From NCBI RefSeq assembly GCF_006345805.1, contig NC_043005.1, forward strand, positions 13,454,001 to 13,518,000: a DNA stretch of 64,000 nt. The letters are read 5' to 3'. The position numbers and the translations under genes were made by a program. Shown here one piece after another: positions 1-62,117 of this stretch. The notes under the pieces were generated by a model, which ran no database searches, was not told the origin of the DNA, and saw only the letters and a program-made list of their open reading frames with translations. Each line of letters starts with the position of its first letter. Position 1 is the first letter of the stretch. The stretch is from Octopus sinensis. Its lineage: Eukaryota.

Positions 1-662
1 TTGGTCCAAGGTGTCCAGGTTTTATGAGGATGACATGCTATACAAGTTTAGAAAAGAACTGAGGTTTATGTCATCTACGTGTTGAAATAATATACATATG
101 GTTAATATGTTAACATAATATGGTTATATATTCCCTTATATATACGGAGTTCTCTTATGTATAAAGTGCTGAAATAATATATAATATTTGTTTAATATAA
201 CAACATAATATAATAATAAATATATTTATATTCTCGTGAATATATAGCATTCTCTCGTGTATAATACAGTAGTGAAATAATATACATACACTCTAAACTT
301 GTGTTAATATAAATTTATCTATAATACAATTCTAGGATGATATGAGATATTACTTTTTCACTATCGTTTACCATAATAACAATGCTGTATTGACTGACTA
401 TATCTATTAGTGTATTCATGAAATTAAATCTCCTTCAAGTTTTGAACTTATGAATTTTATAGATAAATGGAATACGTAAAAGGAATAATTTTGCTATCTG
501 TATTTATTTATAGATTATTTGTTGACGATTCTGCTTCAGAATGATAAAAAAAAAAACGAATTTGTTTGGATGTCATATATCTTATCTCACAAAATATAAT
601 TATATATACAAACACACGTACGTACATGCACACACATATGCATATCCTCTCCCCTCTCTCTC

Positions 663-695
<33 letters not shown>

Positions 696-1849
696 TACAC
701 ACATACATATATACACGTATACATATATACACATAAACTTACATTCACACACAGACATATACACACAAACATACATACATATACACACGCACGTCCTCAT
801 ACACACACAACCGTTACTCAGAATCGATGATAACCGCTAATTGCTTTAAATACCTATGTAGCTGCGACCAGACAAAGTCATTCGATCGACCCTCCTGTCT
901 TCACCCTGCGACTTATCCACGATGCGACAACAGCACGATGCGACGGCTGGTCTGTATATGTTTGTGGAGGGTGGTGGTAACAGTTACACTGCAGAGGAGC
1001 CTCTTTCGGCATTCTCAACGCGCAAAACTATCAAAACCGCCATCTGATCACTGGCATGCCAACTGTTTCTACAAGCTGCAATGGTGTCCGTGAGCAGGTT
1101 ATGAGCATGATTGTCTGCATGTGTGTGTGTAAGTGTGTGGTGTGTGTGTGTGTGTGTGTGTAAGTGTGCGTGTGTATGAGTGTGTGAGAGAGTGCACGTA
1201 TGTGTGTGCATGCGGCACTTGTACGTGTGTTTGTCTACACTGTGTGTATGTATGTATGTATATATATATATATGTATATGTATACAAATATACACACACA
1301 CACGCACACACATGTACATAAATACATGCATACTTACTTACATACATACATACATACATATGTCTATACTTCTCCTTTTCTACTGAAGAAGGACGAACTT
1401 ACGAAACGTTAACTCACTTCCTCTTTCCATTAAGGCACTAAGCTAACACATGTGGTCTTTTATTGTTCGTTATATTTACACCATATTTACAATATAAAAA
1501 AGGCTTTCAACACATATACTCTTTCAGTACACATACAGATTGCTAATTTTGAACTTATGCTGCTCCCATCACCAATAATGAATTGCTTCTCAGCCTACCG
1601 GCTAAATGCGACATCGGTGACTTTTCAATTATTGCTTAACTATAGCAGCAATTTCATCAGCCAATACTGGCTGCCCTTCAGCAGTTGCTGATATTTTAAT
1701 GTGTTTTTAACAATGTACGTCTACGAAGATACTTTCTCAAGATGGATACCACAGTTTCAACATTTACAGCATTTACACACTTTAAGTATTCATACGGATT
1801 ACTAATTTTTGAACTAATATTTCCTCTGTCACTAATAATGAATGAAGAA

Positions 1850-1917
<68 letters not shown>

Positions 1918-1942
1918 GTAAATGTAATATGTGACAATTATT

Positions 1943-2022
1943 CGATAGCCATGATAAAACTCCGAGTTTCGGATGCTGGGGTAGAAATCCACGCCGCCAT
2001 CTCTTCAGTTATCCGGCCATCG
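1943..2022 (-). ncRNA. Type I hammerhead ribozyme motif within a probable Penelope-like terminal fragment (about 1915-2285)
   Basis: Minus strand CGATGGCC-G-GATAA CTGAAGA [stem II] GAAA CTCGGAG TT TTATC-AT-GGCTATCG: intact core boxes, stem I of 5+8 bp, palindromic stem III. Confidence 0.75.
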
Positions 2023-2284
2023 GAAAAAATGCTATGAAAATGACCGTAAAACAAAGGGAAATTACTGTGTGATTGACCGTTATTAAGACAAAAGAGCTAT
2101 TTGAATGACTACTAAGTGAGGGGAGGGAGTTAAAAGTAAGGGGGTAAAAAAGTTCATAGTATTCGCGTAAGCGCGCATGTACATACCTACACATGCGCGC
2201 CCGCACACCCACGTACATGCGCCTGAAAGTATACACTCATCCATCCTCACTTGAAACGTACACATTCTCACCTGCACCATTCGC

Positions 2285-2322
<38 letters not shown>

Positions 2323-2516
2323 CCCACATACGTCCTTGTAACTTAGTGGATCAGCATAAGAGACTGATAGAATAAGTATTGGGCTTTAAAAAAAATAAAT
2401 CCTGGGGTCGATTAGTTTGACTGAAACCCTCACAAGGCAGTGCTCCAACTTGGCTGCAGTCAAATGACTGAAGCAAGTAAAAGAATACAAAAATATATAT
2501 ATGTGTGCATATATAC

Positions 2517-2575
<59 letters not shown>

Positions 2576-2675
2576 TATATGTATGTATGTGTGTATATAT
2601 ATATATGTGTATGTATATATGTATATATATGTATGCATGTATACACACACACACACACATATTCATATTATATAT

Positions 2676-2710
<35 letters not shown>

Positions 2711-3599
2711 TTTAAAGTACAATTAATAAGTCTTTTTATGCATAACAGAATATAAATAGATCATTTTACTGTCTTCGCATCTTCTCCTTCAAAGAAATAG
2801 AATAGATTTGCCTTGACATATTTTACGTTCATGGTTATACCAGTCATTTATCTGCCTTCAAAGAAACAACTGTAGAGCAAGTTCACTATTTAAATCAGTT
2901 ACAAACTAAAACTCAGCTGTAATGGCCTAGCTAATTTTTACTTTGTACATTCGTTAAGTGGTGCTACTGAATAATTATCAAATGTTTTGGCACAGCAAAT
3001 CTTGTATTAAACAATTTGGCATAATTTTATCTCAGGTTTCACACACGTTGTCCAATACACGCTGTGCTGAACATAATTACTATTCATATGTGGCACCTAC
3101 ACGTACATATATACAAGCTTTCCATAGTGTCTCTCACTATCGCAGTATAGTATACATGCAAATTGCTTATTGTGTTCTTATTTGAACTTATAGTACCCAG
3201 AGCTATACTGGGCATATTTTACACACACACACACACACATACACACACAGAGGCACGCATGCACACAAACACATACACACACACACATGCACATGTGTAT
3301 TTGTGTGTGTGTATTTAAGTGTGTGTGTGTATGTGTATTTATGTGTGTGTGTAATACATAACCGGCTGTTGACTTATACCTAGTGGTTAGCTGCCATTGA
3401 CTACAATTGGCATAGTATCCTCATCTCTCTCTCTCTCTCTCTCTCTCTTCCTCTTTCTCTCTCTCTCTCTTCCTCTTTCACTCTTTCTCTCTCTCTCTCT
3501 TTATTTACTTCTATTTCTTCCTCACATGTTCACTCAGATATCCATCTGTAATCCAGTCAGTTCTGTGGCCTACACCTCAGCACACATTTATACACACAC

Positions 3600-3880
3600 A
3601 TTCTCTCTCACTCCTCCACTCACTCTCACTCAATCACTCACTCACTCACTCACTCACTCACTCACTCACTCATTCACACACTCACTGACTCACCCACTCA
3701 CTCACTCACTCACCCACTCACTCACTCACTCACCCACTCACTCACTCACTCACTCACTCATTCACTCACTCACTCATTCACTCACTCAATCACTCACTCA
3801 CTCACTCAATCACTCATTCAATCACTCACTCACTCACTCACTCACTCACTCACTCACACACTCACTCACTCACTCACTCT
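3600..3880. repeat. (ACTC)n microsatellite within a CT-rich tract (3420-4050)
   Basis: Direct reading. Confidence 0.95.
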
Positions 3881-4121
3881 TTCTCTCTCTCTCTCACCCT
3901 ATCACTTTCTTTCTCCCACCTTCCCCCTCTCTCTCTATCACCCTATCACTTTCTTTCCCTTGCCTTCCTTCCTTCCTTCCTTCCCTCTCTCTCTTTCTTT
4001 CTTGTCTGTGTGTCTCCTTCACTCTCTCATTCACCAACTCACTCACTCATTTAAATACTTGGTTGTCCATCATCCATCGTCCGTTCGGCTGTATGGTCTA
4101 CACCCAGTGAATTAATATTAA

Positions 4122-4277
<156 letters not shown>

Positions 4278-4357
4278 TCATTCAATCACATTGTAAACTC
4301 CTTTCAAATCTTCAATCACCCAAATTAAGCCTGGTGATCATGATTCAATGGGTAACC

Positions 4358-4593
4358 TATTTCTCTATTACCCACAAGGGGCTAAGCACAGAGGGGGACA
4401 AACAAGGACAGACATAGGTATTAAGTCGATTACATCGACCCCAGTGCGTAACTGGTACTTAATTTATCGACCCCGAAAGGATGAAAGGCAAAGTCGACCT
4501 CGGCGGAATTTGAACTCACAACGTAACGCAGACGAAATACCGCTAAGCATTTCGCCCGGCGTGCTAACGTTTCTGCCAGCTCGCCACCTTACC
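4358..4593 (-). mobile_element. SINE family B with a 19-bp TSD CATGATTCAATGGGTAACC
   Basis: TSD at 4339-4357 and 4594-4612; core CTTTGCCTTTCATCCTTTCGGGGTCGATAAATTAAGTACCAG. Confidence 0.85.
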
Positions 4594-4949
4594 CATGATT
4601 CAATGGGTAACCATTTAAAAAGTCTAGGCGCTGCAAGCATCTACAAGCCGATGAAGGAGACTCTATGAGGTCACTCATTTTGCCAGAAATAATACCCAAA
4701 TCTCCCTCAAGGCTGCTAAATTTGAGAAGATCTATGGTTATATAGCTTTCAGCCATGACAGCTTTATCTACTTACAAACACAGTGTATGTGAGACTATAT
4801 TATCCAATATATCTGTCTCTTTTTCAAAATAGGAATGATGCAATTTGAAGGAGAGTTGGCTGCTATTTCTAACAGGTTTCTAGCCCCCTAGGAGTTCTTG
4901 CATTGCTTATAATCAAGATTGTTATTGTTACAATTGTTACAAGATTGTT

Positions 4950-5168
4950 AAGGCGGCAAGCTGGCAGAAACGTTAGTACACCGGGCGAAATACTTAGCGG
5001 TATTTCGTCTGAGTTCAGATTCTGCCGAGGCCGACTTTGCCTTTCATCCTTTCGGGGTCGATAAATTAAGTACCAGTTACACACTGGGTTCGATGTAATC
5101 AACTTAATCCCTTTGTCTGTCCTTGTTTGTCCCCTCTGTGTTTAGCCCCTTGTGGGCAATAAACAAAT
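4950..5168 (+). mobile_element. SINE family B, TSD AAGATTGTTA. Further copies at about 6975-7185, 7230-7430, 20198-20612, 26808-27172, 27695-27900, 28017-28520, 41285-41990, 43180-44040, 49625-49850, 58095-58545 and 62820-63050
   Basis: Shared GGCGGCGAGCTGGCAGAAACGTTAGC head, GAGTTCAAATTCC B-box-like motif and conserved core. Confidence 0.85.
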
Positions 5169-5888
5169 AAGATTGTTATTGCTACTGTCTTTTATCCCCC
5201 AAGTCAACTCTATTTACAACAAACGTCTTCAGGGTTCTTAATCATTTCATAATTAGGGCTGCTGTACTAAATGCTGATCCAGCAACTACAGACAGGCCCG
5301 TAAACAGATGCCACTGAGACATCGCACCTGCTGGTTACCATAGGTTAACCACATCAGACATTTTTAATAGACACAAAAACTTCAATAAAGTTAGTTTGAA
5401 AAATAAACCTTACTTCAATGAATCTCTTTATCTGGATGGCCACGCTTGGAAGACATGTATTTATACAGATATAATAATGCCATTGTGAAGGCGTGTGGCT
5501 TAGTGGTTAAGGGTATTTGGCTCACAATCGTAAGGTCATGAGTTCAATTCCCAGCAAGATGTTGTGTCCTTGAGCAAGACACTTTAGTCCACATTGCTCA
5601 GGTCCACTCAGCTGGCAAAAATGAACAGTACCAGTAATTCAAAGGGTCATCCTTGTCACATTCTGTGTTATGCTGAATCTCATTGGGAATTACATTAAGG
5701 GTACATGTGTCTGTGGAATACTCAGCCACATACATGTTAATTTCACAAGCAGGCTGTTCCATTGATCGGATCAAGTGGAACCCTCATCATCATAACCAAC
5801 AGAGTGCCAATGATGCCCTTAATGATCACTGGCAACCTCTAAATAAATAAACGAGCTCCCTCAGAAAAACCGTTAATCTTGGTAATTA

Positions 5889-6125
<237 letters not shown>

Positions 6126-6163
6126 CTAAAATAATATGAAACACTGGGTTACAACATATTCGA

Positions 6164-6164
<1 letters not shown>

Positions 6165-6216
<52 letters not shown>

Positions 6217-6530
6217 CGTGTGTGTGTGTGTGCATGAGAGCAAGTGTGTGTGTGTGTGTGCATGAGAGCAAGTGTGTGTGTGCATGAGAGCAAGTGTGTG
6301 TGTGTGTGTGTGCATGAGAGCAAGTGTGTGTGCATGTGTGCATGAGAGCAAGTGTGCATGTGTGTGCATGAGAGCAAGTATGTATGTGTGTGTGTGAACT
6401 CTAGAGACTACCAAGAAGAGGGCGTGATCATTGTAAGACTCGAGACCACTAAGAAGACAGCGTGATCATTGAAGACTTGAAACTACGAACAAGATAGCAC
6501 GATCACTGTAAGACTCGAGACTACCAAGAT
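6165..6530. repeat. (TG)n with a recurring CATGAGAGCAA spacer, then a roughly 37-bp tandem repeat (GACTCGAGACTACCAAGAAGA..CGTGATCATTGTAA, about 3.5 units)
   Basis: Direct reading. Confidence 0.8.
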
Positions 6531-7548: not shown

Positions 7549-7892
7549 CCATCACCACCATCATCACCACCACCACCACCACCACCACTACCACCACTAC
7601 CATCATCATCACCATCATCATCGCCATCATCATCATCACCATCACCACCACTACTACTGCCACCACCACCACCACTACCATCATCCTCACCATCATCATC
7701 GCCATCATCATCGCCATCATAATCATCATCATCATCATTGCCATCATCATCATCATTATAACCATCGCCACCATCACCACCACCACCATCACCATCATCA
7801 TCATCGCCATCATAATCATCACCATCATCATCATCATCATAACCATCACCACCACCACCACAACCACCACCATCATCCCCATCGTCATCATT
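7430..7892. repeat. (CAT/CAC)n trinucleotide array
   Basis: Direct reading; explains the poly-I/T, poly-S/P and poly-M/V ORFs. Confidence 0.95.
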
Positions 7893-7960
7893 TAACGTCC
7901 GCCTTCCATACCGGCATGGTTGAAAAAAAAGTAAAGTAGCTTAATTAATAACATACTTAC

Positions 7961-8138
7961 TCGTAAACATCTTAAAAATTCATCAAAGTCAATTATTTGA
8001 TTTCCATCCTGATCAAAACTTTGAAACAGTGACTTCACTTCGTTGATCTCCATGACAATACCGTAGTCGTGGATACCTTTCTTGAACTCGCTGAAGTCTA
8101 TCTTATGATTCGCATCATCATCAATGATCCGGAACATT
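7961..8138 (-). CDS. CAPSL: Calcyphosin-like protein, coding exon 2 (EF-hands 1-2: MFRIIDDDANHKIDFSEF...FDQDGNQIIDFDEFLRCLR)
   Basis: Two EF-hand loops. Acceptor ttcacag|A completes AGA with the phase-2 end of exon 1; donor GTAAGT at 7960; 178 nt keeps the frame. Confidence 0.96.
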
Positions 8139-8363: not shown

Positions 8364-8899
8364 CAGGGTGTCCCCAAAAAATGTATACACTTGCTGCAAC
8401 AGTCTGTCATGCCAAGCATTAGAGAGGACTTAGAACAGGAAGAGTTTTATTTCCAGCAAGATGGGGCAACTCCACACTACCATCGCGATGTTAGATCCTT
8501 TCTTGATGGGATCTTGCCAAACAGGTGGATTGGACGGAGAGGTTTTGTCGAATACCCTCCACGTTCACCAGACCTCACACCACTAGACTTCTTTTTATGG
8601 GGATACCTAAAGGACAAAGTCTATGCAGAGAAACCTGCAACAGTCATTCAATTGAGGGCAACCATTGAACATGAATGTACGAATATCCCAAGGGAATTGT
8701 TCCATGATGTGTGCCATTCCATCGCTTCGCGTTGTCAGCAGTGTCTGGAGCAGAACGGGCATCAGTTTGAGAACATGCAATAACAAGACAATAGAATGAT
8801 ATTTGTAAATTCTTTTACATGTTGAAAATTATTCGAATTATAATAAACCCCAAATTTACAATTATTTAAGGTGTGTATACATTTTTTTGGGACACCCTG
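8364..8899 (+). mobile_element. Internally deleted Tc1/mariner element, DD41D type, retaining the transposase C-terminus (ORF 8391-8783)
   Basis: 27-bp TIRs CAGGGTGTCCCCAAAAAATGTATACAC (one mismatch), TA on both sides; QQDGA...SPDLTPLD with 41 residues between the two aspartates. Confidence 0.92.
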
Positions 8900-11033: not shown

Positions 11034-11825
11034 CACACACACACACACACACACAGCAAAGATTTCTGACAGTCAGAGAATCAATCAATAGGAACATTTT
11101 TGCTAGCACTAGGAGATATAAATAAATGACTGGATGGAAGTTCAATCAAGTCTCCTTCACCAAACTATTTCGGACACCAATGCCCCACCAATCCTCCCGT
11201 CACACCCATGCCCGATTTGATCTCATTGTCTCATGTTATTCAACGACTCTGGTCTGTTTGACAATGGCGGTTTTAATGTGGCTAGTCCATTATAGACACA
11301 GTTACAAAGGGTAACACAACTAATTAACTATTTAAACCATCTTACTAATGAGTTAATGGCTTTTGTCAGTTGTCAGTAAAACTTCACACCGAACAAGAAA
11401 AAGAATGGCAATTAAACAAAGGATTATTTTTTTATCTTAATTGACCTGTTAGAAAAAGTAGCTAAATTTTCCTCATATCCTACCACAGCTTTGTACAAAA
11501 TGGTAAAAAAAAAATACCTTAGATATCATCATCATCGTCACCTTCTGGACATTACAGTTCTGACTCTTAGAACTGGAGGTGCCAGTTATCTAGTTTCCAA
11601 GGTATGTAAATGACTGCAATCATAATAGATGCCACTCTGTGCAGAGAGTTGCTCACTTACTGGAGTGGAGCGATGTGAAATGAAGTGTCTTGCTCAAGAA
11701 CACAATGCACTGCCCAGTCCAAGAATGGAAACCATGACCCGGTAATTATGAGTAATAATAATAATAATAACAATAACGTTGAAAAATACCACAGGAATGA
11801 GAACCCAGGTTCGAAATTTTCCCAC

Positions 11826-11871
11826 GACACCTGAAGAAGGCTGGAGGGTATATCAGCTGAAACGTTGTGTT
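11826..11871 (+). ncRNA. Minimal type I hammerhead-like motif in a roughly 150-bp repeat (about 11772-11920)
   Basis: GACAC CTGAAGA A GGCTG..CAGCT GAAAC GTT GTGTT; stem I GACAC/GTGTT, ACGT palindromic stem III. Confidence 0.6.
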
Positions 11872-12345
11872 AACAACAAATAAGATGAGGACAAATATCC
11901 GTCGAATGTAAATAATGTAAATAATAATGATAATGATGGGTGTTTTTTTGCCACCAGGGCAAAGAATGAGGGGGACAATACAAAGACAGACATAAAGTGT
12001 GGGGGGTTTACATATAATGGAATGATAAAATAAAAAGTATACATGGTACACATTAGAAGGAAAGCATACAGGGTATATGACAGAAGAAAAAAATAAAAAT
12101 AAAAATAATCCTTTCTACTCTAGGGAGAAGGCCTGAAATTTTGGACCACAGATACAAGCACTTTCATACATTAGATTAGTGGTTCACAAAGTGAGCAGTA
12201 CTGCCCCCTTTCGAGGCAGTGGAAAGATCCGGTGGTGGGGGTAGCATTGATGGAAAGTGGGATGATAATGGGGTGACCAAAATGGGGCGATAGATGTAAA
12301 AAAAAAAATTATTAAAGACTCCAGTAAATTCTAAAATAAAATTTA

Positions 12346-26530: not shown

Positions 26531-27183
26531 TGAAATTTACACAAGTTTAGGTCCACCACAACCACCTCCACCACTGTGCGAAAAAGAGTAAAAATGAGAT
26601 TTTGACATTTTGACATCTGCCATAATGAATATGATAATCAATAGAGGCTTTTGTCACATCTGGTCTTGTAATGGTTGCAATGAATACAAGAACAAAATTC
26701 CATTTGAATATGAATCTATAAACAAAATGTGTTACATCTAAGGATCCCATTGGTTAATGACAATGTTCAGATATACTTCTTTTATTATTATTATTATTAT
26801 TATCATCAAGGCGGCGAGCTGGCAGAACCGGGCAAAATGCGTAGCCGTATTTCGTCTGCTGTTACGTTCTGAGTTCAAATTCCGCCAAGGTCGACTTTGC
26901 CTTTCATCCTTTCTGGGTTGATAAATTAAGTACCAGTTATGCACTGGGATCGATATCTGTCCTTGTTTGTCCCCTCTGAGTTTAGCCCCTTGTGGGTAGT
27001 AAAGAAATAGGTATTTCGTCTGCCGCTACATTCTGAGTTCAAATTCCGCCGAGGTCGACTTTGCCTTTCATCCATTCTGGGTTGATAAATTAAGTACCAG
27101 TTATGCACTGGGATCGATATCTGTCCTTGTTTGTCCCCTCTGTGTTTAGCCCCTTGTGGGTAGTAAAGAAATAATTATTATTA

Positions 27184-27912: not shown

Positions 27913-28018
<106 letters not shown>

Positions 28019-28232
28019 GGTGGTGAGCTGGCAGAATCGTTAGCAAGCCGGGCAAAATACTTCACAATATTTTGTCTGCCGCTATGTTCTGAGTTCAAAT
28101 TCTGCTGAGGTTGACTTCACCTTTCATCCTCTCAGGATCAATAAATTAAATACCAGTGAAATACTGGGGTCGATGTAATCAACTAGTCCTCCAACCCCAA
28201 AATTTCAGGCCTTGTGTCTATAGTAGAAAGGA

Positions 28233-28267
<35 letters not shown>

Positions 28268-28515
28268 TATTATTATTATTATTATTATATATTATTATTA
28301 AGGTGGTGAGCTGGCAGAATCGTTAGCAAGCCGGGCAAAATACTTCACAATATTTTGTCTGCCGCTATGTTCTGAGTTCAAATTCTGCTGAGGTTGACTT
28401 CACCTTTCATCCTCTCAGGATCAATAAATTAAATACCAGTGAAATACTGGGGTCGATGTAATCAACTAGTCCTCCAACCCCAAAATTTCAGGCCTTGTGT
28501 CTATAGTAGAAAGGA

Positions 28516-28560
<45 letters not shown>

Positions 28561-29664
28561 TATTATTATTATCATACTCAGTTGCCCTCGTTATTTATTA
28601 CAAGATCCATACTCCTGTTATAATTATGCTTTGTAACAGAAGTCAACATCAAATAAATTACAACGTGCAGGATTATTGAGTGTTTATGTGTGTGTATCAT
28701 TTTAAGAGGTTACTTTCAAATATAAACATGTATGTAAATAAAAATGATATATCAAATACACAATGATTATAATGCATTCCTAATTCTATTTTCAAATTTG
28801 ACAGCTTTTTTTATATACCAAAATAAATTTTAGTAAATTGAAGGTTTTATTTTATGAAAAAAAAACAATGTCACTTCTAAAATCATTGGCTAATGAATAT
28901 GACATAAATACATAAAACCGTCAATTAATGTGTGTATAAACACACACACATACATATGTACATACATACTTGCATACATACATACTTACATACATAAATA
29001 CTTACATACATACATACATGCATACACACACATACATATATACATACATACAAACATACAAACATACATACATACATACATACATACATACATACATACA
29101 TACATACATACACACACACAGACATACATACATATATACATACGTATGTATTGAGTGAGAGAGCAGCATATGCCATTAAAGTAATACTGGTATACTCATC
29201 ATGACAACCTATCTGATACCCATCATGATAGCCCAGTACACCCACCACAACAACCCATCTGATAAGGACACACTAGGTATATGCATCACAACAATATGTG
29301 CACACACCTGGTAACCTTATATCAAGATGAACTGTGCATGACCTTGCAGGTGGGACCCAGTTAGAAATTTCCTTCGGGTTGAGTAGACCATTCCACTCAA
29401 AAGAGCCCCGAATAAGGTTTGTTTAAGGATGATGAATGAAACACCCATGTTTCCAGGGGTGAATTATTCAAATCCCAAAGAATCATTCTCAATACATGGC
29501 TATCATGCTCCTCTACTGCTCCTGCCCGTGATCAGAGATGCACAAACCGGACATTCTCAACTGATTGACGTCAAGCAATTGACAAACAATATTTGTTATA
29601 GCCCATCTTTTATATCATGACAAAACATACTTGATAGCACTAAAGCCATGAGAGCCACCGCCAG

Positions 29665-39691: not shown

Positions 39692-39722
<31 letters not shown>

Positions 39723-40069
39723 TATATATGTATGTATTTTAATCAATGAAATTCCAATCCAGTCTGATTTTTATGTTTTATCATTTACAATCTTTACAGT
39801 TTTACAGTATTTATAATAATAGAATATTATATATTTGCTATGATAAAACTAGTACTTTCATACACTATGCAATCATCAGGTTTATGCAATAGTAACAATC
39901 GTTTTCCACAAGTGACAACTGTTGTGAAATGATTAAATTTGTCCTTTAAATACCTTCTGATAGACTCCAGCAGGCTGAATCTTATGACCTGTATTTTGAC
40001 CAATTAGTATGTTGTTTAGATGTCATGGTTTGGTGGGTGTGTCAACTAAGTTTGAATTGTATTTCGACC

Positions 40070-40099
<30 letters not shown>

Positions 40100-42040: not shown

Positions 42041-42625
42041 AATGAGGGGTAAAGATGAGGGGCAAAGATGAGTGGCAAAGATGAGTGGCAAAGATGAATG
42101 GCAAAGATGAGTGGCAAAGATGAGTGGCAAAGATGAATGGCAAAGATGAGTGGCAAAGTTGAATGGCAAAGATGAGTGGCAAAGATGAGTGGCAAAGATG
42201 AATGGCAAAGATGAGTGGCAAAGATGAGTGGCAAAGATGAATGGCAAAGATGAGTGGCAAAGAAGAAAGGCAAAGATGAGTGGCAAAGATGAGTGGCAAA
42301 GATGAATGGCAAAGATGAATGGCAAAGATGAGTGGCAAAGAAGAAAGGCAAATATGAACGGCGAAGATGAGTGGCAAAGATGAGTGGCAAAGATGAATGG
42401 CAAAGATGAGTGGCAAAGATGAATGGCAAAGATGAGTGGCAAAGAAGAAAGGCAAAGATGAGTGGCAAAGATGAGTGGCAAAGATGAATGGCAAAGATGA
42501 GTGGCAAAGATGAACGGCAAAGATGAACGGCAAAGATGAATGGCAAAGATAAATGACAAAGATGAGTGGCAAAGATGAATGGCAAAGATGAGTGGCAAAG
42601 ATGAATGGTAAAGATGAATGGGAAA
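42041..42625. repeat. 13-bp minisatellite (GATGAGTGGCAAA), about 45 units
   Basis: 585 bp = 45 x 13; variants GATGAATGGCAAA and GAAGAAAGGCAAA. Confidence 0.97.
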
Positions 42626-44159
42626 GTTGAATAGCATTTGAACTCAGAACATAAAGAGCCATAAGAAATGCCACTAAGCATTTTGTTAGGCGGGCGAAAG
42701 ATAATATCAATTAATCTTTATTAAAAGAAAATGAAAAATTATCATTATTATTATTATTATTAGTAAATTATTCGACAAAACAATTATTACTTTAAAATCT
42801 TTATTGTTGGTTTAACAGCTAAATGAAAAAATAAAATTATTCAAATCACAAAGATTAAAAATAAATAGATTAGTATAAACCATGCAAGTGGGACAGTTAG
42901 AACCCTTCGCCAATAGTTTAGGAGGTTAAAAATTGATAAAAAAATAAAATTTCTAAACACTTTCAGTGTATTGTGTGTTGCTTTGGTCTCATGTTTAAAA
43001 AATTATTTCTTATTTAGGCACAAAGTCTCTTGGAACGTAGATACAAGATCTCGAATACTGGAGGTGGTTTAAAATTAATATACCAGTACCTATGGTTTAC
43101 AGAAAACAAGGTATTTTGTCCAGGTCCAGTACTATACCAATTCTGTCATCCACCACTCTCATTTATATATAAATAAGAGAATTTGAACCCAGAATCAGTA
43201 AAGATGGATGGAATGCGTATTAAGCATTTAGCTCAGTGTGCTAATGGTTCTACCATTTCATCGCCTTGAGCTGAAGATATTTTTCAAATTTTAACCACTG
43301 GGATAGCAATTTCAGTGAAGGAGATAGAGTTGATTACATTAACCCCTCATGCTCAACTGATATTTATTTTATCGACCATGAAAGAAGGAAAGAGAAAGTT
43401 GACCCCAGCGGAATTTGGATGCAGAAGGTAAGGACGGCTGTATAATGGTTTCTGACTGAGGTACAAGGTCTAAGTCAATAGGTCAGTCAATACCATCTAC
43501 TACAGTACTTCACTAGTACTTATTTTATCAACCATGGAGGGATGAGGGCAAAGTTGACTCTGGTAGGATTTGAATTCAGAATGCAAAGAATCAGAAGAAA
43601 CATTGGTTTAAAACTTTGGTACTAGACCAGTAAGTTCAGAGGGGAAGGGCTAAATTGATTACATTGCCTCTCCCCGCAGTGTTCAACTAGTACTTATTTA
43701 GTTGACCCTGAATGAAAGCCAAAGTTGATCTCAGTGGAATTTGAACTCAGAAATGTAAAGACGGACAAAATGCCACTAAGCATTTAATCCAGTGTACCAA
43801 TAATTCCGCCACCTCACCACCATAACCAGAAGAAATATTAGTTTCAAATTTTTATCACAGGGCCAGGAATTTCAGGAAAGGAGATAAGTTGATTACATCA
43901 AACCCCCCAGTAGTCAACTGGTACTTTTTTTAACGATCTGGAAAGGATGAAAGGCAAAGTCAACTGAAGCGGAATTTGGACTCAGAAGGAAAGAATAGAT
44001 GAAAAGCTGCTAAGCATTTTGCCTGTCAGCTCACTGCCTTAACCAAAGAAAATATGGCAAAGCATTTTTTTTTCTGCTGCTCTTACAATTCTGCTAGATT
44101 GATGTGAATATTACACAATCGCACTAGCTCCTCTTCAATGAATACCAATCTTTATACTC

Positions 44160-47627: not shown

Positions 47628-50535
47628 CAATGGGCTTTTACGCAGTTTCTATCACAAATTCACTCACAAGGCACTGATCAGCCTAAGGCTGTAAAAAGCT
47701 CTTGCTAAAGGTGCTGTGTAGTGGAACAAACCCAAGTTTCTTAACCACAGCAATACCTGCACCTGTGAAATATGTTGGACTATTATGAAAGGAGTTCCAT
47801 ACTAATAACAAATTGTGCAATTTCACTACAGGACAAAAGAATTGCAGTAATTTATCAGTAAAAGCACACTGATCTTGGGAAGAGATATAATGTTCTTGCC
47901 TTCAGGGTGCCAAATGCTACTCTCCTTCATCAATGTTTACATTTCAAAAAAGCAATAAAAGCTCTCCAGGCATTCATAACATAAAAATCAAACATTTTCC
48001 TACAACCATTAAAATGCTCTTGTTATACGAGACAACTTACACAGCTGTTTTAATCAGTAAATCATAAGGAACGGCTGTTTTAAATTCAAGAATTTGCTTT
48101 TCATATTTAGGAATTATGCAACTGAATAACATTTTTTTTTTAAAGTGTTACAATGCAAGTTTTGAAATAAAGTGCAACCAGAAGCAAAACTGCATATACA
48201 TCATCATCATCATCATCATTTAACGTCCGCTTTCCATGCTAGCGTGGGTTGGACGGTTCAACTGGGGTCTGTGAAGCCAGAAGGCTGCATCAGGCCCAGT
48301 CTGATCTGGCAGTGTTTCTACGGCTGGATGCTCTTCCTAACGCCAACCACTCCGTGAGTGTAGTGGGTGCTTTTTACGTGCCACCTGCACAGGTGCCAGA
48401 CGGAGCTGGCAAACAGCCACGGAGGGATGGTGCTTTTTACGTGCCACCGGCACGGGGACCAGGCAAGGCTGGCAACGGCCACATACATATATGTATTAAA
48501 AAAAAACGTTGAACACAATAATAAATAAATATAGGGATTATATTATTAAAATACCATCACGAGTGGCAAGCGAATTATCAGCCATATAGGCAAATTAATA
48601 AAATATATACATACAATATTAGATATGTACATATATAGATTTGTGACTATTTGGTGATACAGAAGTATTTTTGACTTCTATTTTAGTGATATAGGTGCTC
48701 ATGTAGTACCCTTGTGTATAAATGTGCATATCTAATATTGTATGTATATATTTTAGCCCTTCTTGTCTGTGTTACTGTTATTCCCCTTGTCCTGTCTTTT
48801 ACTGCTTATATTTTATACAAATCAAAATCGAAGAATCAAATCAAATCGAAATCGATCCACATCAATGGAATTTGTAGTTTGTGGTACCAGTGCCAGTGGC
48901 ACATAAGAGAACCATCCGAACGTGGCCATAGCCAGCACCGCATCGACTGGCCTCCACGCTGGTGGCACGTAACGAACACCATCCGATCGTGGCTGTGCCA
49001 GCCCTGCCTGGCCTCCGTGCCGGTGGCACGTAAAAACACCATCCGAGCGTGGCCGTTCGCCAGCCTCGTCTGGCACCTGTGTCGGTGGCACATAAAAAGC
49101 ACCCACTACACTCACGGAGTGGTTGGCGTTAAGGAAGGGCATCCAGCTGTAGAAACACCACCAGATCCGATGGCCTGGTACAGCCTTCGGGCTTCTCAGA
49201 CCCCAGTTAAACCGTCCAACCCATGGTAGCATGGAAAGCGGACGTTAAATGATGATGATTATGATATGTCAAGTTTATGGAGGCACATAACTGTGATAAT
49301 GAAGTGTATAAGAAGGTAGATGCATGCTCTCTATACTTTTGTCATGTTGAAAAAGAAAGGTGGGAGTCTCCTAATTCCCCCAACCCTATTTTCTGTACAC
49401 CAAAAGCCTAATGCGAATATATTTACAATCTTATATAATTCATTATCATAGCTAAAGGCGGAACCACCACTACCATCATCATTGTGGTCATGAACGTTTA
49501 ATGCACATTTTCCATGCTAGTATAGATGGATAACAGGAGCTGGTCAGCTGGATAGCTTTTCAGACTCCCAATTGCTTGTTGTGGCCTGGTTTCTATGGCT
49601 AGATGCCCTTCCAAATACCTGTTTCTTTTATACCCACAAGGGGCTAAACATAGAGGGGACAAACAAGGATAGACAAACGGATTAAGTCGATTACATCAAC
49701 CCCAGAGCATAACTGGTACTTAATTTATCGACCCTGGAAGGATGAAAGGCAAAGTCAACCTCGGCAGAATTTGAACTCAGAACGTAACAGCAGATGAAAT
49801 ATCGCTAAGCATTTTGCCCAGTGTGCTAACGTTTCTGCCAGCTCGCCGCCCTTCCTAATACCAACCACTTTACAGAGTATGTGGGGAGCTTTTTATGTGC
49901 CACTGGCATGGGTGCATTCACACAGCACCATCACAAGTGAATTTTAGGTGGCACTGCCACCTGTAAAGGACAAGCCTGTATGTATGGATGACAGTGGTTT
50001 TACTCAGCTTGATGTGTCTTCTCAAGTACAGCAAATCACAAGAACTCCCAGTCCCTTGCCATTTCCTCAGTGAGGCCCAGCATCTGAAGATCCTTTCTCA
50101 CCACTTCGTCCCACATCTTTCTGGGTCTACCTCTTCCACAATCACAGCTTAGCACTTCTTTATGCAGCTGTCCTCATCTACATGCACCTCCAAATATTTG
50201 AATATATTTCAGGCAACAAACTATAAAAACTAAAACATCATCATCATCATCATTTAGCATCCGTTTTCCATATTGGCATGGGTTACATGGTTTGACTGGA
50301 ACTGGTAAGCTGGAGAGCAGCACCAGGTTCCAGTCTGATTTGGCATGGTTTCTATGGCTGGATGCTCTGCCTAATGCCAACCACTCCATAAAGTGTAAAA
50401 TGTCTTTTACATGTCACCAGCACAAGTGACTTTAATGTGTCACCAACACAATTCACAATTTTAAAAAATCCTAACAAACTAAAATGAAATAAGAAAAAAC
50501 AAAAGAACAAAAGTTAAGTGCAATGGTTTACTTAC

Positions 50536-50668
50536 ATCGTTGATAGTTCACGAGCAATCTGCTCTAGGGTTTTGTTTTTGGTCTCTGGGACACAGTAGAA
50601 GATAAATATAAATGCAATGGATGAGATAACAGCGAATAAGAGAAATGTCCATGGCAATGTGATGAGGT
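50536..50668 (-). CDS. SLC2A10: GLUT10/12-like transporter exon (TM12, VPETKNKTLEQIARELST)
   Basis: PETK motif; tttgcag| acceptor and AT|GTAAGT donor; 133 nt, phase 1/2. Confidence 0.94.
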
Positions 50669-50867
50669 CTGCAAAGAAAAGAGAAAGTTGAATTTTGTTT
50701 TTGTCTTTTAAATTTTATTTTGGATGACGGAGAAGTTAGGTGGATAATTCAAAACAGTGGATCTCCAGTAGGGTCCATATGTCCCCTGAGGGTTCATATA
50801 AGATTTTTGGGAGTTCATGCAACAAAATAGTAAATTGAGTATAAAAAATAATAATAAATGCACCTTT

Positions 50868-51310
50868 TTAAAACCTAGCCAGGCTCATGGGCCCGGTTTC
50901 CCGGTTTCTATAGCGTTTGTGTTCCCCAGCTAGATGGGACGCCAGTCCATTGCAGCGTTACTCATTTTTGCCAGCTGAGTGGACTGGGGCAATGTGAAAT
51001 GAAGTGTTTTGCTCAAGAACACAACGCGTCATCCGTCCAGGAGTTGAAACCACAATCTTACGATCATAGTGCTGACACCCTAACTTCCACTTGCACTCTT
51101 TTAAAGCCTAGCCAGGCTCATGGGGCCCAGTTTCCTGGTTTCTATGGCATATGTGCTCCCCAGCTGGATGGGACGCCAGTCCATCACAGCATTACTCATT
51201 TTTGCCAGCTGTGTGAACTGGAGCAACGTGCAATGAAATGTTTTGCTCAAGAACACAATGCGTCGCCCGGTCCAGGAATCGAAACCACAATCTTACAATC
51301 ATGGTGCTGG
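50868..51310 (-). mobile_element. Two tandem copies of another tRNA-headed SINE
   Basis: Units at about 50868-51085 and 51098-51310 share CCTAGCCAGGCTCATGGG...GAAACCACAATCTTAC. Confidence 0.7.
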
Positions 51311-54124: not shown

Positions 54125-54247
54125 GAATTACATGAAGGAACGATGATGATACAATGAAGTTGGCCGTCCAGTTGATTATGATAACAACACCAACAGCCCG
54201 ACCTCGGATGGATGGAGGGTATATCTCACTTAGCAGGATCCAGCTGA
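54125..54247 (-). CDS. SLC2A10: GLUT10/12-like transporter exon (ISWILLSEIYPPSIRGRAVGVVIIINWTANFIVSSSFLHVI)
   Basis: Hand-translated. Sugar-porter motifs SEIYP..IRGRA and NW.AN; taatag| acceptor and C|GTGAGT donor; 123 nt, phase 1/1. Confidence 0.94.
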
Positions 54248-54289
54248 CTATTAATGGTAGACAAAAGAAAGGAGTGATAAATATATATA

Positions 54290-54475
54290 TAGGGAGAGTT
54301 TACAAAAAAAAACAAAAGACGAAGACAGGTGGTGTACAAAACAAACAGATGTATTAGTATAACGCTCAGGAATAGAAAAAGTCTTTTATGTTTCCAGCCT
54401 ATGCTCTTCTACAGAAAGGGACACAGGAAAAACAAGGAGAGAGAAAAATGTGTGTAGTGGCTAACGATCTACCAT
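54290..54475 (-). mobile_element. Penelope-like terminal repeat fragment, hammerhead variant decayed (54383-54418)
   Basis: Reverse complement of the 40100-40290 family, with GCTG GAAAC ATA replacing GCTC GAAAC GTA. Confidence 0.45.
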
Positions 54476-54480
54476 GGTGA

Positions 54481-54482
<2 letters not shown>

Positions 54483-54519
<37 letters not shown>

Positions 54520-54603
54520 TATATATAAATTTGATTAGAGGTTATGTTAATAATAAACAATTATTAACTTCCCAATTGCCATTTTATTTTTCTTCTTATA
54601 TAT

Positions 54604-54699
<96 letters not shown>

Positions 54700-54702
54700 C
54701 AT

Positions 54703-54754
<52 letters not shown>

Positions 54755-54830
54755 ACATATATATACATATATATATAAACATATATATACATATATATAT
54801 AAACATATATATACATATATATATATAAAC
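54483..54830. repeat. (TA)n-rich microsatellite
   Basis: Direct reading. Confidence 0.95.
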
Positions 54831-55368
54831 TTCAATTGTCACTAAGTGTGAATAAGGGTATTGACACACCTAAATTGCTAAAAATAAAAGTTAAAATACC
54901 CTTAATTTTGTAGGAAAAGCACAGATACACGATGCTGACAAGAGAGGCAACCATCCTATACAAACTTGAAAATCCTCAGACTAGATGTCTAGTTTCGTTT
55001 ATTCTGTAGACATCTCTATTGAGGACTGCTCGCATGGCACATGTTTGGCTAATTCCACCTTTCAATATATATGTATTTGCCATAAAAAATTATGGATGAT
55101 TTAGCGGAATGCTAACGTGTATACAAAGTCATTTCTGTATCACTATACTGCACTTTTAAGGTAATGATTACAGAATGTCATTTTTTTTTATTTACTCAAT
55201 CAATCTGATATCTGACATTACATATCTGAAAAGTAAGGTTAAAAAAAAAGTAAGTCAGAAGAAAGTTAGAGTTCTTGAAAAAGGTGTCCAGTGACACGAC
55301 CTGTATAAGCACATACACATGTTAGCTGATACACTCAATTACACTTATATAGACATAGAAATTCTATG

Positions 55369-55773
55369 GGAGTGGCTGTGTGGTTAGTAGCTTGTTTACC
55401 AACCACATGGTTCCGAGTTCAGTCCCACTGCGTGGCACCTTGGGCAAGTGTCTTCTACTATAGCCTCGGGCCGACCAAAGCCTTGTGAGTGGATTTGGTA
55501 GACGGAAACTGAAAGAAGCCCGTCGTATATATATATATGCGTACGTGTGTTTGTGTGTCTGTATTTGTCCCCCTAGCATTGCTTGACAAATGATGCTGGT
55601 GTGTTTATGTCCCCGTTACTTAGTGGTTTGGCAAAAGAGACCGATTGAATAAGTACTGGGCTTACAAAAGAATAAGTCCCGGGGTCGAGTTGCTCGACTA
55701 AAGGCGGTGCTCCAGCATGGCCGCAGTCAAATGACTGAAACAAGTAAAAGAGTAAAAGAGAGTAGAAGAGAGT
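55369..55773 (+). mobile_element. SINE family A abutting a splice donor
   Basis: Homologous to 12346-12755; the tail ends about 6 nt from the exon boundary at 55780. Confidence 0.85.
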
Positions 55774-55779
55774 ACATAC

Positions 55780-60008: not shown

Positions 60009-60048
60009 AGAATAAATAATACCAATAAATTTCCACTTTTCTGCCTTG

Positions 60049-60087
<39 letters not shown>

Positions 60088-60723: not shown

Positions 60724-60763
<40 letters not shown>

Positions 60764-62057: not shown

Positions 62058-62117
<60 letters not shown>

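What the first reader, a model, noticed from the sequence alone, without database searches (positions are those of the whole stretch)
1943..2022. Near-canonical type I hammerhead ribozyme 2.1 kb downstream of, and co-oriented with, CAPSL
Seen in the sequence (minus): intact CUGAAGA and GAAA boxes; stem I of 5 bp (GAUAA/UUAUC) plus 8 bp (CGAUGGCC/GGCUAUCG) split by an internal loop; a 13-position stem II with 10 pairs and an AUUU loop; stem III ACUC-G-GAGU, too tight for a monomer but self-complementary for a dimer; cleavage triplet GUU (cut between 1958 and 1957). One extra C precedes GAAA. The bulged stem I and looped stem II are the parts used for tertiary contacts in natural hammerheads. 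Inference: read-through or long-3'UTR CAPSL transcripts would include it and might be cleaved.
Basis: partly seen in the sequence, partly recalled or inferred. Interest (0 to 1): 0.8.

Follow-up and report, generated by a model that had tools for sequence, protein, structure and literature searches.

The report
Solitary hammerhead ribozyme motif in octopus
A sequence with all the hallmarks of a type I hammerhead self-cleaving RNA really does sit 2.1 kb downstream of the octopus CAPSL gene. It looks like a stranded remnant of a ribozyme-carrying mobile element, an ordinary thing in invertebrate genomes, and not a regulator of CAPSL.

Summary
The window is Octopus sinensis chromosome CM016867.1. 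The motif is exactly as described on the minus strand at 2022-1943. It has intact CUGAAGA and GAAA boxes, a 5+8 bp stem I, a 13-position stem II with 10 pairs, a short stem III and cleavage after U1958.

It is not a chance match. A hammerhead descriptor hits only this site in the window, and 3 of 1000 shuffles give any hit. With the full stems I estimate about 1e-7 per window.

Several caveats apply:
- No Rfam hammerhead model reports it, though Rfam also misses a clear Penelope-type hammerhead in the same window.
- The active fold is 4.5 kcal/mol worse than an alternative that pairs the core.
- An extra C adjoins the core.
- The cleavage triplet is GUU.

The motif lies near the 3' end of a 373-bp single-copy block that splits a (TA)n array. 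Two of three other hammerhead-like motifs in the window sit in similar blocks. O. vulgaris has the ortholog, carrying a stem II-breaking change, and an old 5'-truncated foldback copy 3.5 kb away.

Best reading: a relic of a Penelope-like or retrozyme-type element, evolving neutrally. The CAPSL link is unsupported.

The parts
1943..2022 (-). Whole type I hammerhead motif (80 nt)
   Evidence: Read directly. It is the only hit of the descriptor in the window. Shuffle control.
2009..2022 (-). Stem I 5' strand: CGAUGGCC (2022-2015), unpaired G (2014), GAUAA (2013-2009)
   Evidence: Pair probabilities are 0.58-1.0.
2002..2008 (-). Core box CUGAAGA (C3-A9, N7=A)
1972..2001 (-). Stem II hairpin: 13 positions per arm with 10 standard pairs, loop AUUU at 1988-1985, mismatches G.G, C.A and C.C
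   Evidence: The foldback copy in O. vulgaris keeps this hairpin. It has lost both partners of the G-U pair and has C.A changed to C-G.
1971..1971 (-). Extra C between stem II and G12. It can equally be read as C11.1 paired to G10.1, with the neighbouring C bulged.
   Evidence: register A is -20.0 kcal/mol and register B is -23.4 kcal/mol.
1967..1970 (-). Core box GAAA (G12, A13, A14, A15.1)
1959..1967 (-). Stem III ACUC-G-GAGU. It folds as 3 bp plus a CGG triloop in a monomer, or as a 9-position intermolecular helix with a central G.G in a dimer.
   Evidence: Cofolding the dimer gives -64.7 kcal/mol, against 2 x -27.9 kcal/mol for two monomers.
1958..1958 (-). H17 = U. The predicted scissile bond is 3' of this base, between 1958 and 1957.
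   Evidence: Position relative to the core. Cleavage itself is not tested.
1943..1957 (-). Stem I 3' strand: UUAUC (1957-1953), AU (1952-1951), GGCUAUCG (1950-1943)
1915..2287 (-). 373-bp block with the hammerhead near its 3' end (43 nt from the cut to the block end). It is single-copy in the window. I take it to be a 5'-truncated 3' end of a hammerhead-bearing retroelement.
   Evidence: No other copy in the window. It is 99.2% identical in O. vulgaris. The 3' end ...GAATAATTGTCACATATTACATTTACAG is shared with the O. vulgaris foldback copy.
1850..1914 (.). (AT)32 microsatellite flanking the block on its 3' side in minus-strand terms
   Evidence: TRF
2288..2318 (.). (AT)15 microsatellite flanking the block on its 5' side in minus-strand terms
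   Evidence: TRF
4122..4271 (-). Last coding exon of CAPSL (calcyphosin-like, XP_029641143), with the stop at 4124-4122. This is context, not part of the element.
3500..3505 (-). The only canonical AATAAA between the CAPSL stop and the hammerhead. The next signals on this strand are ATTAAA at 1700-1695 and AATAAA at 1464-1459, both beyond the hammerhead.

Best explanation
The 80 nt are a genuine hammerhead-derived motif of type I topology. They lie 43 nt from the 3' end of a 373-bp fragment inserted into, or splitting, a (TA)n microsatellite in the intergenic DNA downstream of CAPSL in Octopus sinensis.

The fragment is most likely a heavily 5'-truncated remnant of a hammerhead-bearing retroelement. 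That element would be of the Penelope-like kind, or a Penelope-mobilised non-autonomous retrozyme. These elements carry the ribozyme near their 3' ends, insert into (TA)n, and leave truncated and inverted copies.

If a transcript crosses the motif on the minus strand, the RNA could cut itself between U1958 and U1957 by the usual in-line transesterification. That reaction leaves a 2',3'-cyclic phosphate and a 5'-OH. It would probably be inefficient as a monomer, because a competing helix sequesters the core. The copy appears to evolve neutrally and has no demonstrated host function.

Shown: the motif, its improbability by chance, its genomic setting, its orthology and the second copy. Inferred: the retroelement origin. 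Untested: catalysis and transcription.
For: - Motif and non-randomness: all invariant core positions and three helices are present. Three of 1000 shuffles give any minimal hit and none gives one as good. The full-stem estimate is about 9e-8 per window.
- Other hammerheads nearby: hammerhead-bearing repeats are common in this window. A Penelope-type descriptor finds 11831(+) and 39879(-), against 0 hits in 400 shuffles. A degenerate copy lies at 60508(-).
- (TA)n setting: three of the four hammerhead-like motifs lie in blocks of 700 bp or less bounded on both sides by (TA)n. Such blocks cover 5.6% of the window, giving P=7e-4. Leaving out the candidate, two of three do, P=0.009.
- Second copy: O. 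vulgaris has a second copy 3.5 kb away. It is 5'-truncated within stem II, folded back on the stem II loop, shares the same 3' end, and also sits in a (TA)n context.
- Stem II preserved: that copy preserves the stem II hairpin through paired changes. Both partners of the G-U pair are lost, and C.A becomes C-G.
- Literature: Penelope-like elements carry hammerheads in pseudo-LTRs near the 3' end. They show high 5' truncation, adjacent inverted 5'-truncated copies and (TA)n targets (PMC8557442). Animal retrozymes of 170-400 nt carry type I hammerheads (PMC7229834). Retrozymes derive from Penelope-like pseudo-LTRs and leave dispersed monomers (bioRxiv 10.64898/2026.07.22.740005).
- Neutral evolution: there are 3 substitutions in 376 nt against O. 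vulgaris, with a local background of 1-2.4%. All three are derived in O. vulgaris and one breaks stem II.
Against: - No reverse transcriptase or GIY-YIG reading frame lies near it, and no tandem unit.
- No other copy exists in the 64-kb window or the extra 16 kb of loci. Genome-wide copy number could not be measured. The second copy could therefore be an old local duplication and not a transposition.
- Stem III (3-4 bp) and the long stem II differ from the minimal Penelope-type hammerheads.
- Closely spaced (TA)n arrays are common in this genome.
- No Rfam hammerhead model reports the motif.
- The 373-nt block is no more structured than shuffles, z=-0.15, unlike typical retrozyme RNAs.
Confidence: 0.55

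Rival explanations
1. Exapted cis-acting ribozyme of CAPSL. Long-3'UTR or read-through CAPSL transcripts include the hammerhead and are cut at 1958/1957, which limits or destabilises those isoforms.
For: The motif has the same orientation as CAPSL and lies 2.1 kb downstream. Only one canonical poly(A) signal lies between the stop codon and the motif, and the next two are beyond the motif. A transcript that skips the first signal would therefore cross it. No other gene is called within 10 kb downstream. Retrozyme copies that overlap exons in Xenopus lie mostly in 3'UTRs.
Against: There is no transcript evidence of any kind. The AATAAA at 3505-3500 predicts a 3'UTR of about 640 nt that ends 1.5 kb upstream. 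The interval between is microsatellites and a SINE-like repeat. The O. vulgaris ortholog has a derived U10.3-to-C change that drops the hammerhead fold to -16.9 kcal/mol, against an MFE of -26.4. The substitution rate equals the background. Nothing comparable lies downstream of Argonauta CAPSL.
Confidence: 0.06
2. Chance look-alike. A hairpin-rich stretch happens to carry CUGANGA and GAAA in the right places, with no descent from a ribozyme and no activity.
For: No Rfam hammerhead hit. The active fold is not the predicted minimum, and stem III pair probability is 0.02. There is an extra C at the core and a GUU triplet. About 127 minimal-descriptor hits are expected by chance in a genome of this size.
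Against: With the observed stem lengths the expectation falls to about 4e-3 per genome. Rfam at the same threshold also misses the clear Penelope-type hammerhead at 11821-11875, so its silence says little. The setting in a (TA)n-bounded block is shared with other hammerhead-like motifs. A second copy keeps the stem II hairpin through paired changes.
Confidence: 0.17
3. Member of a currently active non-LTR retrozyme family. It would be transcribed, self-cleaved, circularised and retrotransposed.
For: The block length of 373 bp falls in the 170-400 nt range of animal retrozymes with type I hammerheads. All core positions are intact in O. sinensis. Dimer pairing through stem III is favourable.
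Against: It is a single unit, not a tandem array, so only one cut is possible and no monomer can be released. The block is not unusually structured. The copy is shared by two species and is decaying in one of them. The only other copy is a rearranged fragment without the CUGANGA box.
Confidence: 0.1

Closest known systems
Canonical type I hammerheads of invertebrate non-LTR retrozymes (Acropora, Mytilus; Cervera & de la Pena 2020, PMC7229834)
   Same: Type I topology, a full core, a stem III of 2-3 bp with a small loop, a stem I interrupted by an internal loop, a unit of a few hundred bp, low G+C surroundings and an invertebrate host.
   Different: Here there is a single unit, not a tandem array. 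Stem II is unusually long (13 positions, with internal mismatches). There is an extra C at the stem II/G12 junction, and H17 is U. No circular RNA evidence exists.
Hammerheads in the pseudo-LTRs of Penelope-like elements (PMC8557442; Cervera & de la Pena 2014 as cited there)
   Same: The ribozyme lies close to the 3' end of the unit. The unit is embedded in (TA)n. It is a 5'-truncated copy, and an inverted/foldback truncated copy lies nearby in O. vulgaris.
   Different: Penelope-type hammerheads are minimal, with a 1-bp helix III capped by a palindromic loop, like 11831(+) and 39879(-) in this window. The candidate has longer helices. No RT/GIY-YIG coding sequence is adjacent.
Amphibian satellite 2 / axolotl hammerheads that act as dimers (PMC7229834)
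   Same: Weak helix III. The self-complementary ACUCGGAGU allows a double-hammerhead, and cofolding favours it by about 9 kcal/mol.
   Different: Those lie in huge tandem arrays, so neighbouring units pair in cis. A solitary copy would need two transcripts to meet. A monomer helix III of 3 bp plus a triloop is possible here.
Discontinuous hammerhead in rodent Clec2 3'UTRs (Martick et al. 2008; from my own knowledge)
   Same: The idea of a hammerhead downstream of a coding region, in the same orientation, reducing expression of transcripts that contain it.
   Different: The Clec2 ribozyme lies inside the documented 3'UTR, is split by a long insert, and is conserved among rodents. Here the motif is contiguous, 2.1 kb beyond the stop codon and past a canonical poly(A) signal, and it shows no constraint.

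Membership tests
Hammerhead ribozyme (type I) | Invariant core: C3 U4 G5 A6 N7 G8 A9, G12 A13 A14, A15.1-U16.1, H17 not G | tested here: met
   CUGAAGA at 2008-2002, GAAA at 1970-1967, U16.1 at 1959, U17 at 1958
Hammerhead ribozyme (type I) | Three helices around the core, with helix I open and helices II and III closed by loops | tested here: met
   Stem I is 5+8 bp and stem II has 10 of 13 pairs. Stem III is 3 bp plus a CGG triloop, which is the weakest element.
Hammerhead ribozyme (type I) | Helix II abuts A9 and G12 directly (10.1-11.1 pair, no unpaired base at the junction) | tested here: inconclusive
   One C too many at 1971. It can be read as an insertion before G12, or as G10.1-C11.1 followed by a bulged C. 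Nearest-neighbour energy prefers the insertion register (-23.4 against -20.0 kcal/mol).
Hammerhead ribozyme (type I) | Match to a curated covariance model (Rfam Hammerhead_1, _3, _II, HH9, HH10) | tested here: not met
   No hit at gathering score on the window, nor at E<=10 on 601 nt or 106 nt. Calibration: the Penelope-type hammerhead at 11821-11875 is also missed at E<=10.
Hammerhead ribozyme (type I) | The active secondary structure is the favoured fold | tested here: not met
   The MFE is -27.9 kcal/mol and pairs CUGA of the core with UCGG of stem III. The hammerhead fold is -23.4 kcal/mol, and stem III pair probability is 0.02. Tertiary contacts are not modelled.
Hammerhead ribozyme (type I) | Covariation that maintains the helices among relatives | tested here: inconclusive
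   Only one ortholog is available, with one G-C to G-U change and one A-U to C.A change. One foldback partial copy shows paired loss of a G-U pair and a C.A to C-G change in stem II.
Hammerhead ribozyme (type I) | Mg2+-dependent site-specific self-cleavage | not testable with these tools
   Needs in vitro transcription.
Animal non-LTR retrozyme | Head-to-tail tandem repeats (at least 2 units) of 170-400 bp, each with a type I hammerhead | tested here: not met
   TRF finds no such array here. The block 1915-2287 has no second copy in the window. At most it is a solitary 'monomer'.
Animal non-LTR retrozyme | [quoted passage not shown] | not testable with these tools
   No RNA data were reachable.
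Penelope-like element (3' end / pseudo-LTR) | Adjacent ORF with reverse transcriptase and GIY-YIG endonuclease | tested here: not met
   No ORF of that kind lies within several kb. The flanks are microsatellites, a SINE-like repeat and CAPSL. This is compatible with extreme 5' truncation or a non-autonomous derivative.
Penelope-like element (3' end / pseudo-LTR) | Hammerhead close to the 3' end of the unit | tested here: met
   There are 43 nt from the cut site to the block end at 1915. The same 3' end is found in the O. vulgaris foldback copy.
Penelope-like element (3' end / pseudo-LTR) | Insertion into (TA)n, with 5'-truncated and inverted truncated copies | tested here: met
   (AT)n lies on both sides. 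The O. vulgaris copy is truncated in stem II and folded back. It could also be an old local rearrangement.
Regulatory 3'UTR hammerhead (Clec2 type) | Lies inside the mature mRNA of the host gene | not testable with these tools
   No transcripts were available. The poly(A) signal layout predicts that the default 3' end lies upstream of the motif.
Regulatory 3'UTR hammerhead (Clec2 type) | Conserved under constraint among related species | tested here: not met
   There are 2 substitutions in 80 nt against O. vulgaris, one of them disruptive, with a background of 1-2.4%. It is absent downstream of Argonauta CAPSL.

The most novel reading that the evidence does not exclude
The hammerhead has been co-opted as a transcript-limiting element for CAPSL. 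RNA polymerase II transcripts that miss the proximal poly(A) site at about 3500 would be severed at 1958/1957 before the distal signals at 1700 and 1464. The ribozyme would then set the balance between short and long 3'UTR isoforms, or aid termination. This would be the first host-gene hammerhead function in a cephalopod.
Probability: 0.05. Interest if true: 0.6.

Novelty: new member of a known kind. Interest (0 to 1): 0.3.

Why it matters
Type I hammerheads are already known in thousands to hundreds of thousands of copies in invertebrate and amphibian genomes. They are tied to retrozymes and Penelope-like elements, so one more copy changes little.

The modest value here has three parts:
- Cephalopods are not covered in the hammerhead literature I could search. 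The only hits for 'hammerhead ribozyme' with 'octopus' or 'cephalopod' were a Penelope-element survey and unrelated papers.
- This window shows at least three hammerhead-like motifs that sit preferentially in (TA)n-bounded blocks. That pattern would be easy to test genome-wide and would link octopus microsatellite structure to Penelope-type insertion.
- The foldback copy centred on the stem II loop is a neat footprint of hairpin-primed synthesis.

If the CAPSL link were real it would matter more, but nothing supports it.

Tried and rejected
- **Rfam 15.** I searched at gathering score on the window, and at E<=10 on 601 nt and 106 nt. No hammerhead family was reported. The same test on the Penelope-type hammerhead at 11790-11895 was also negative, so I give the result little weight.
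- **Looking for further copies.**
  - BLAST of the block against the window and loci found none beyond the ortholog and the O. vulgaris foldback.
  - A six-frame translation of the block as one concatenated query against the 5.8-billion protein set gave no hit.
  - Exact 22-24-mers in the viral, metagenome and prokaryotic genome collections gave no hit.
- **Sampling more octopus DNA.** I tried homologs of the sugar-transporter gene in the window.
- **Constraint test.** Comparing O. sinensis with O. vulgaris has no power, because divergence is only 1-2.4%.
- **Retrozyme-like compact structure.** The 373-nt block gave z=-0.15, so this was rejected.
- **Argonauta L002 2700-2890.** This inverted repeat carries CUGACGA...GAAA, but no stem I can form. 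I rejected it as a hammerhead.
- **Homology to the 39879 block.** There is a collinear 53-nt ungapped match from GAAA onward, including 13/14 identity over AGUUUUAUCAU(G/A)GC. Three of 300 shuffles score as well. I keep it as a lead only, because the cleavage registers differ by three nucleotides.
- **The O. vulgaris-only 1.9 kb as a recent insertion.** I rejected this because the foldback arms differ by about 9%, so the structure predates the species split. Deletion or assembly collapse in O. sinensis is more likely.

Full report
**Where the window comes from.** The window matches Octopus sinensis chromosome CM016867.1 (assembly GCA_006345805.1) at 100% identity. Window positions 1-6400, reverse-complemented, equal L003 35637-29238. 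By arithmetic on the locus range, window position x corresponds to record position 13,454,000 + x.

The EF-hand exons on the minus strand belong to calcyphosin-like protein (CAPSL, XP_029641143). Examples are 7892-8137, 5886-6119 and 4122-4271. The coding region ends at 4122.

**The observation.** On the minus strand the sequence reads:

- CGAUGGCC-G-GAUAA (2022-2009)
- CUGAAGA (2008-2002)
- GAUGGCGGCGUGG-AUUU-CUACCCCAGCAUC (2001-1972)
- C (1971)
- GAAA (1970-1967)
- CUC-G-GAG-U (1966-1959)
- U (1958)
- UUAUC-AU-GGCUAUCG (1957-1943)

- Both core boxes are intact.
- Stem I is 5 bp plus 8 bp (one G-U) across a 1x2 internal loop.
- Stem II has 10 standard pairs in 13 positions and an AUUU loop.
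- One extra C precedes GAAA.
- Stem III is ACUC-G-GAGU.
- The triplet is GUU, with the scissile bond between 1958 and 1957.

I make one correction. Stem III is not forbidden in a monomer, because A-U, C-G and U-A closed by a CGG triloop is a legal hairpin. I make one refinement. The extra C can be read as C11.1 pairing with G10.1, followed by a bulged C. That reading leaves the core junction canonical.

**Is it more than chance?** My descriptor requires CUGANGA, GAAA, A15.1-U16.1 and H17 not G. It also requires contiguous stems of I>=4, II>=3 and III>=3, and allows an optional one-base bulge. It finds exactly one site on both strands of the window, and that site is the candidate.

In 1000 dinucleotide-preserving shuffles, three had any hit. 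None had stems of I>=5, II>=4 and III>=4. The window's pairing probability is 0.382. Using it to add the further 8-bp distal stem I and 6 of 9 further stem II pairs gives about 9e-8 per window. That is about 4e-3 per 2.7-Gb genome. The minimal descriptor alone would give about 127 chance hits per genome (the genome size is from my own knowledge). The full structure is therefore not a chance product even genome-wide.

**Points against a 'near-canonical' label.**

- No Rfam 15 hammerhead model reports the site. This holds at gathering score and at E<=10 on 601 nt or 106 nt.
- I calibrated this negative result. The same search over 11790-11895, which holds a clear Penelope-type minimal hammerhead, also reports no hammerhead family. 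Rfam's silence therefore says little.
- Thermodynamics is the more telling point. The predicted minimum (-27.9 kcal/mol) keeps stems I and II but pairs C3-U4-G5-A6 with UCGG of stem III. The hammerhead fold is -23.4 kcal/mol, or -24.2 with the core forced open. Stem III pair probability is about 0.02.
- Two copies cofold to -64.7 kcal/mol, against 2 x -27.9, through the self-complementary stem III region. A double hammerhead is therefore feasible, but a solitary genomic copy has no neighbour to pair with in cis.
- H17 = U is permitted but uncommon (my own knowledge).

**Context.**

- The motif lies in a 373-bp block (1915-2287) that has no other copy in the window.
- The block is bounded on both sides by (AT)n arrays, at 1850-1914 and 2288-2318.
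- The hammerhead is near the block's 3' end in minus-strand terms, with 43 nt between the cut site and the array.
- Upstream, between the block and CAPSL, lie a SINE-like repeat (2329-2527, 11 copies in the window) and a series of microsatellites.
- No reverse transcriptase or endonuclease reading frame is nearby.
- The block as a whole is no more structured than shuffles, z=-0.15.

**Relatives.** The O. vulgaris ortholog (L001 31127-31502) is 99.2% identical, with three substitutions in 376 nt.

- Two of these fall in the hammerhead. U10.3 to C turns an A-U pair in stem II into C.A. A distal stem I C to U turns G-C into G-U.
- With the second copy as outgroup, all three changes are derived in O. 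vulgaris.
- The hammerhead fold of the O. vulgaris version is -16.9 kcal/mol, against an MFE of -26.4.
- Background substitution divergence between the two species is 2.4% over 6.2 kb, and about 1% in the nearest unique flanks. There is therefore no sign of constraint, and also little power to detect any.

O. vulgaris also has a second copy 3.5 kb further downstream (L001 34978-35113). It sits inside about 1.9 kb that O. sinensis lacks.

- It is one foldback. A copy truncated within stem II is mirrored about the stem II loop, so it has GAAA, stem III, the stem I 3' strand and the 3' tail on both arms, but no CUGANGA.
- The arms differ by about 9% and the copy is 92-93% identical to the candidate, so it is old.
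- It shares the candidate's 3' end (...GAATAATTGTCACATATTACATTTACAG) and lies in a (TA)n context.
- Its stem II hairpin differs from the candidate by loss of both partners of the G-U pair, and by C.A becoming C-G. The hairpin is thus maintained.
- A foldback centred on a hairpin is what snap-back priming of a truncated cDNA would leave. This last point is my inference.

Argonauta hians has no match to the motif, and no CUGANGA...GAAA pattern, in the 10 kb downstream of its CAPSL.

**Other hammerhead-like motifs in the window.** I used a Penelope-type descriptor in which helix III is A15.1-U16.1 closing a 2- or 4-nt loop, so that the whole is palindromic. It finds two sites, against none in 400 shuffles:

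- 11831(+): GACAC-CUGAAGA-AGGCUGG...CAGCU-GAAA-CG-U-U-GUGUU
- 39879(-): AAAC-CUGAUGA-UUGCAUAGUGUAU-GAAA-GUAC-U-A-GUUU

The first belongs to a ~158-bp repeat. That repeat has a degenerate second copy at 60414-60571(-) and an adjacent inverted partial copy at 60616-60677.

Three of the four motifs lie in blocks of 700 bp or less bounded on both sides by (TA)n>=8. These are the candidate, 39879 and 60508. Such blocks make up 5.6% of the window. That gives P(>=3 of 4) = 7e-4. Leaving out the candidate gives P(>=2 of 3) = 0.009.

The 39879 block and the candidate block also share a collinear 53-nt ungapped match from GAAA onward, including 13/14 identity over AGUUUUAUCAU(G/A)GC. Three of 300 shuffles score as well. 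I treat this as a lead only.

**Comparison with what is known.**

- Penelope-like elements carry hammerheads in their pseudo-LTRs near the 3' end. They are usually 5'-truncated, often have an adjacent inverted truncated copy, and prefer (TA)n targets (PMC8557442).
- Canonical type I hammerheads of animals sit in non-LTR retrozymes of 170-400 nt (PMC7229834).
- A 2026 preprint derives retrozymes from Penelope pseudo-LTRs. It reports dispersed monomers and notes that exon-overlapping copies are mostly in 3'UTRs (10.64898/2026.07.22.740005).

The candidate fits the setting of a truncated Penelope-like or Penelope-mobilised element: a 3'-terminal hammerhead, (TA)n flanks and a truncated foldback relative. 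Its helices are longer than the minimal Penelope type, and it is not in a tandem array. I therefore file it as a hammerhead-derived motif of a retroelement remnant, not as a proven member of either element family.

**The CAPSL idea.**

- On the minus strand, the only canonical poly(A) signal between the stop codon (4122) and the motif is AATAAA at 3505-3500. The next are ATTAAA at 1700-1695 and AATAAA at 1464-1459, both beyond the motif.
- The default mRNA would therefore end about 1.5 kb upstream. Only transcripts that skip that signal would cross the ribozyme.
- No transcript assemblies for the O. sinensis or O. vulgaris protein were on record.
- With neutral-looking evolution and a damaged ortholog, a regulatory role is possible but unsupported. 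I give it about 5%.

**Verdict.** The most likely nature is a solitary, probably weakly active or inactive, retroelement-derived type I hammerhead in intergenic DNA. It is a new member of a known kind, of modest interest.

Noticed in passing
window 11821-11875 (+); repeat 11768-11925: A Penelope-type minimal hammerhead: GACAC-CUGAAGA-AG(G)CUG...CAGCU-GAAA-CG-U-U-GUGUU, with helix III as the ACGU palindrome. It sits in a ~158-bp repeat inside a CAPSL intron and is conserved in O. vulgaris (L001, C3 at 19908). No shuffle of 400 gives such a motif.
   Followed up: partly
window 60414-60571 (-) and 60616-60677 (+): A second, degenerate copy of the same repeat, in which helix III is AAGU and no longer palindromic. 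It has an adjacent inverted partial copy. The whole lies in a 641-bp block bounded by (TA)n arrays, an arrangement typical of Penelope-like insertions.
   Followed up: partly
window 39840-39883 (-); block 39715-40071: A third hammerhead-like motif: AAAC-CUGAUGA-UUGCAUAGUGUAU-GAAA-GUAC-U-A-GUUU, with helix III as the AGUACU palindrome. It lies in a 357-bp block flanked by (AT)n on both sides. It shares 13/14 nt (AGUUUUAUCAU(G/A)GC) with the candidate just after the core.
   Followed up: partly
L001 33612-35545 (O. vulgaris) against L003 35869-35898 (O. sinensis): About 1.9 kb of microsatellites, palindromes and repeat fragments is present in O. vulgaris and replaced by about 30 bp in O. sinensis. 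It contains the foldback hammerhead fragment. This is either a deletion or an assembly collapse in O. sinensis.
   Followed up: partly
window 2171-2200: A perfect 10-bp G+C-rich inverted repeat (GCGCGCATGT / ACATGCGCGC, 10 nt apart) lies inside the same 373-bp block as the hammerhead. It extends to an ~18-bp hairpin in the RNA fold.
   Followed up: no
window 50535-62792 (-): Exons of a sugar-transporter-like (MFS, Pfam Sugar_tr) gene lie on the minus strand, for example 55730-56368, 54027-54299 and 50535-50714.
   Followed up: no
window 8391-8783 (+): A 130-aa ORF in a CAPSL intron looks by eye like the C-terminal part of a mariner/Tc1-type transposase (...QQDGATPHY...PPRSPDLTPLDFFLWGYLK...). 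Pfam gave no hit at E<=0.01.
   Followed up: partly
window 4355-4590 and about 15 other sites; 2329-2527 and 10 other sites: Two abundant SINE-like repeat families are present, some as tandem duplications (26847-27173, 27951-28572, 58091-58530). The window is extremely rich in microsatellites.
   Followed up: no
window 42042-42630: A minisatellite of 45 copies of the 13-mer ATGAGTGGCAAAG, 89% matching.
   Followed up: no
L002 2700-2890 (Argonauta hians, upstream of CAPSL): A long inverted repeat whose arms each carry CUGACGAAGGGGCUAUUGACCCCGAAAAUUUGG. The core boxes and a GGGG/CCCC stem II are present, but no stem I can form. It is probably a foldback/MITE-like element and not a ribozyme.
   Followed up: partly
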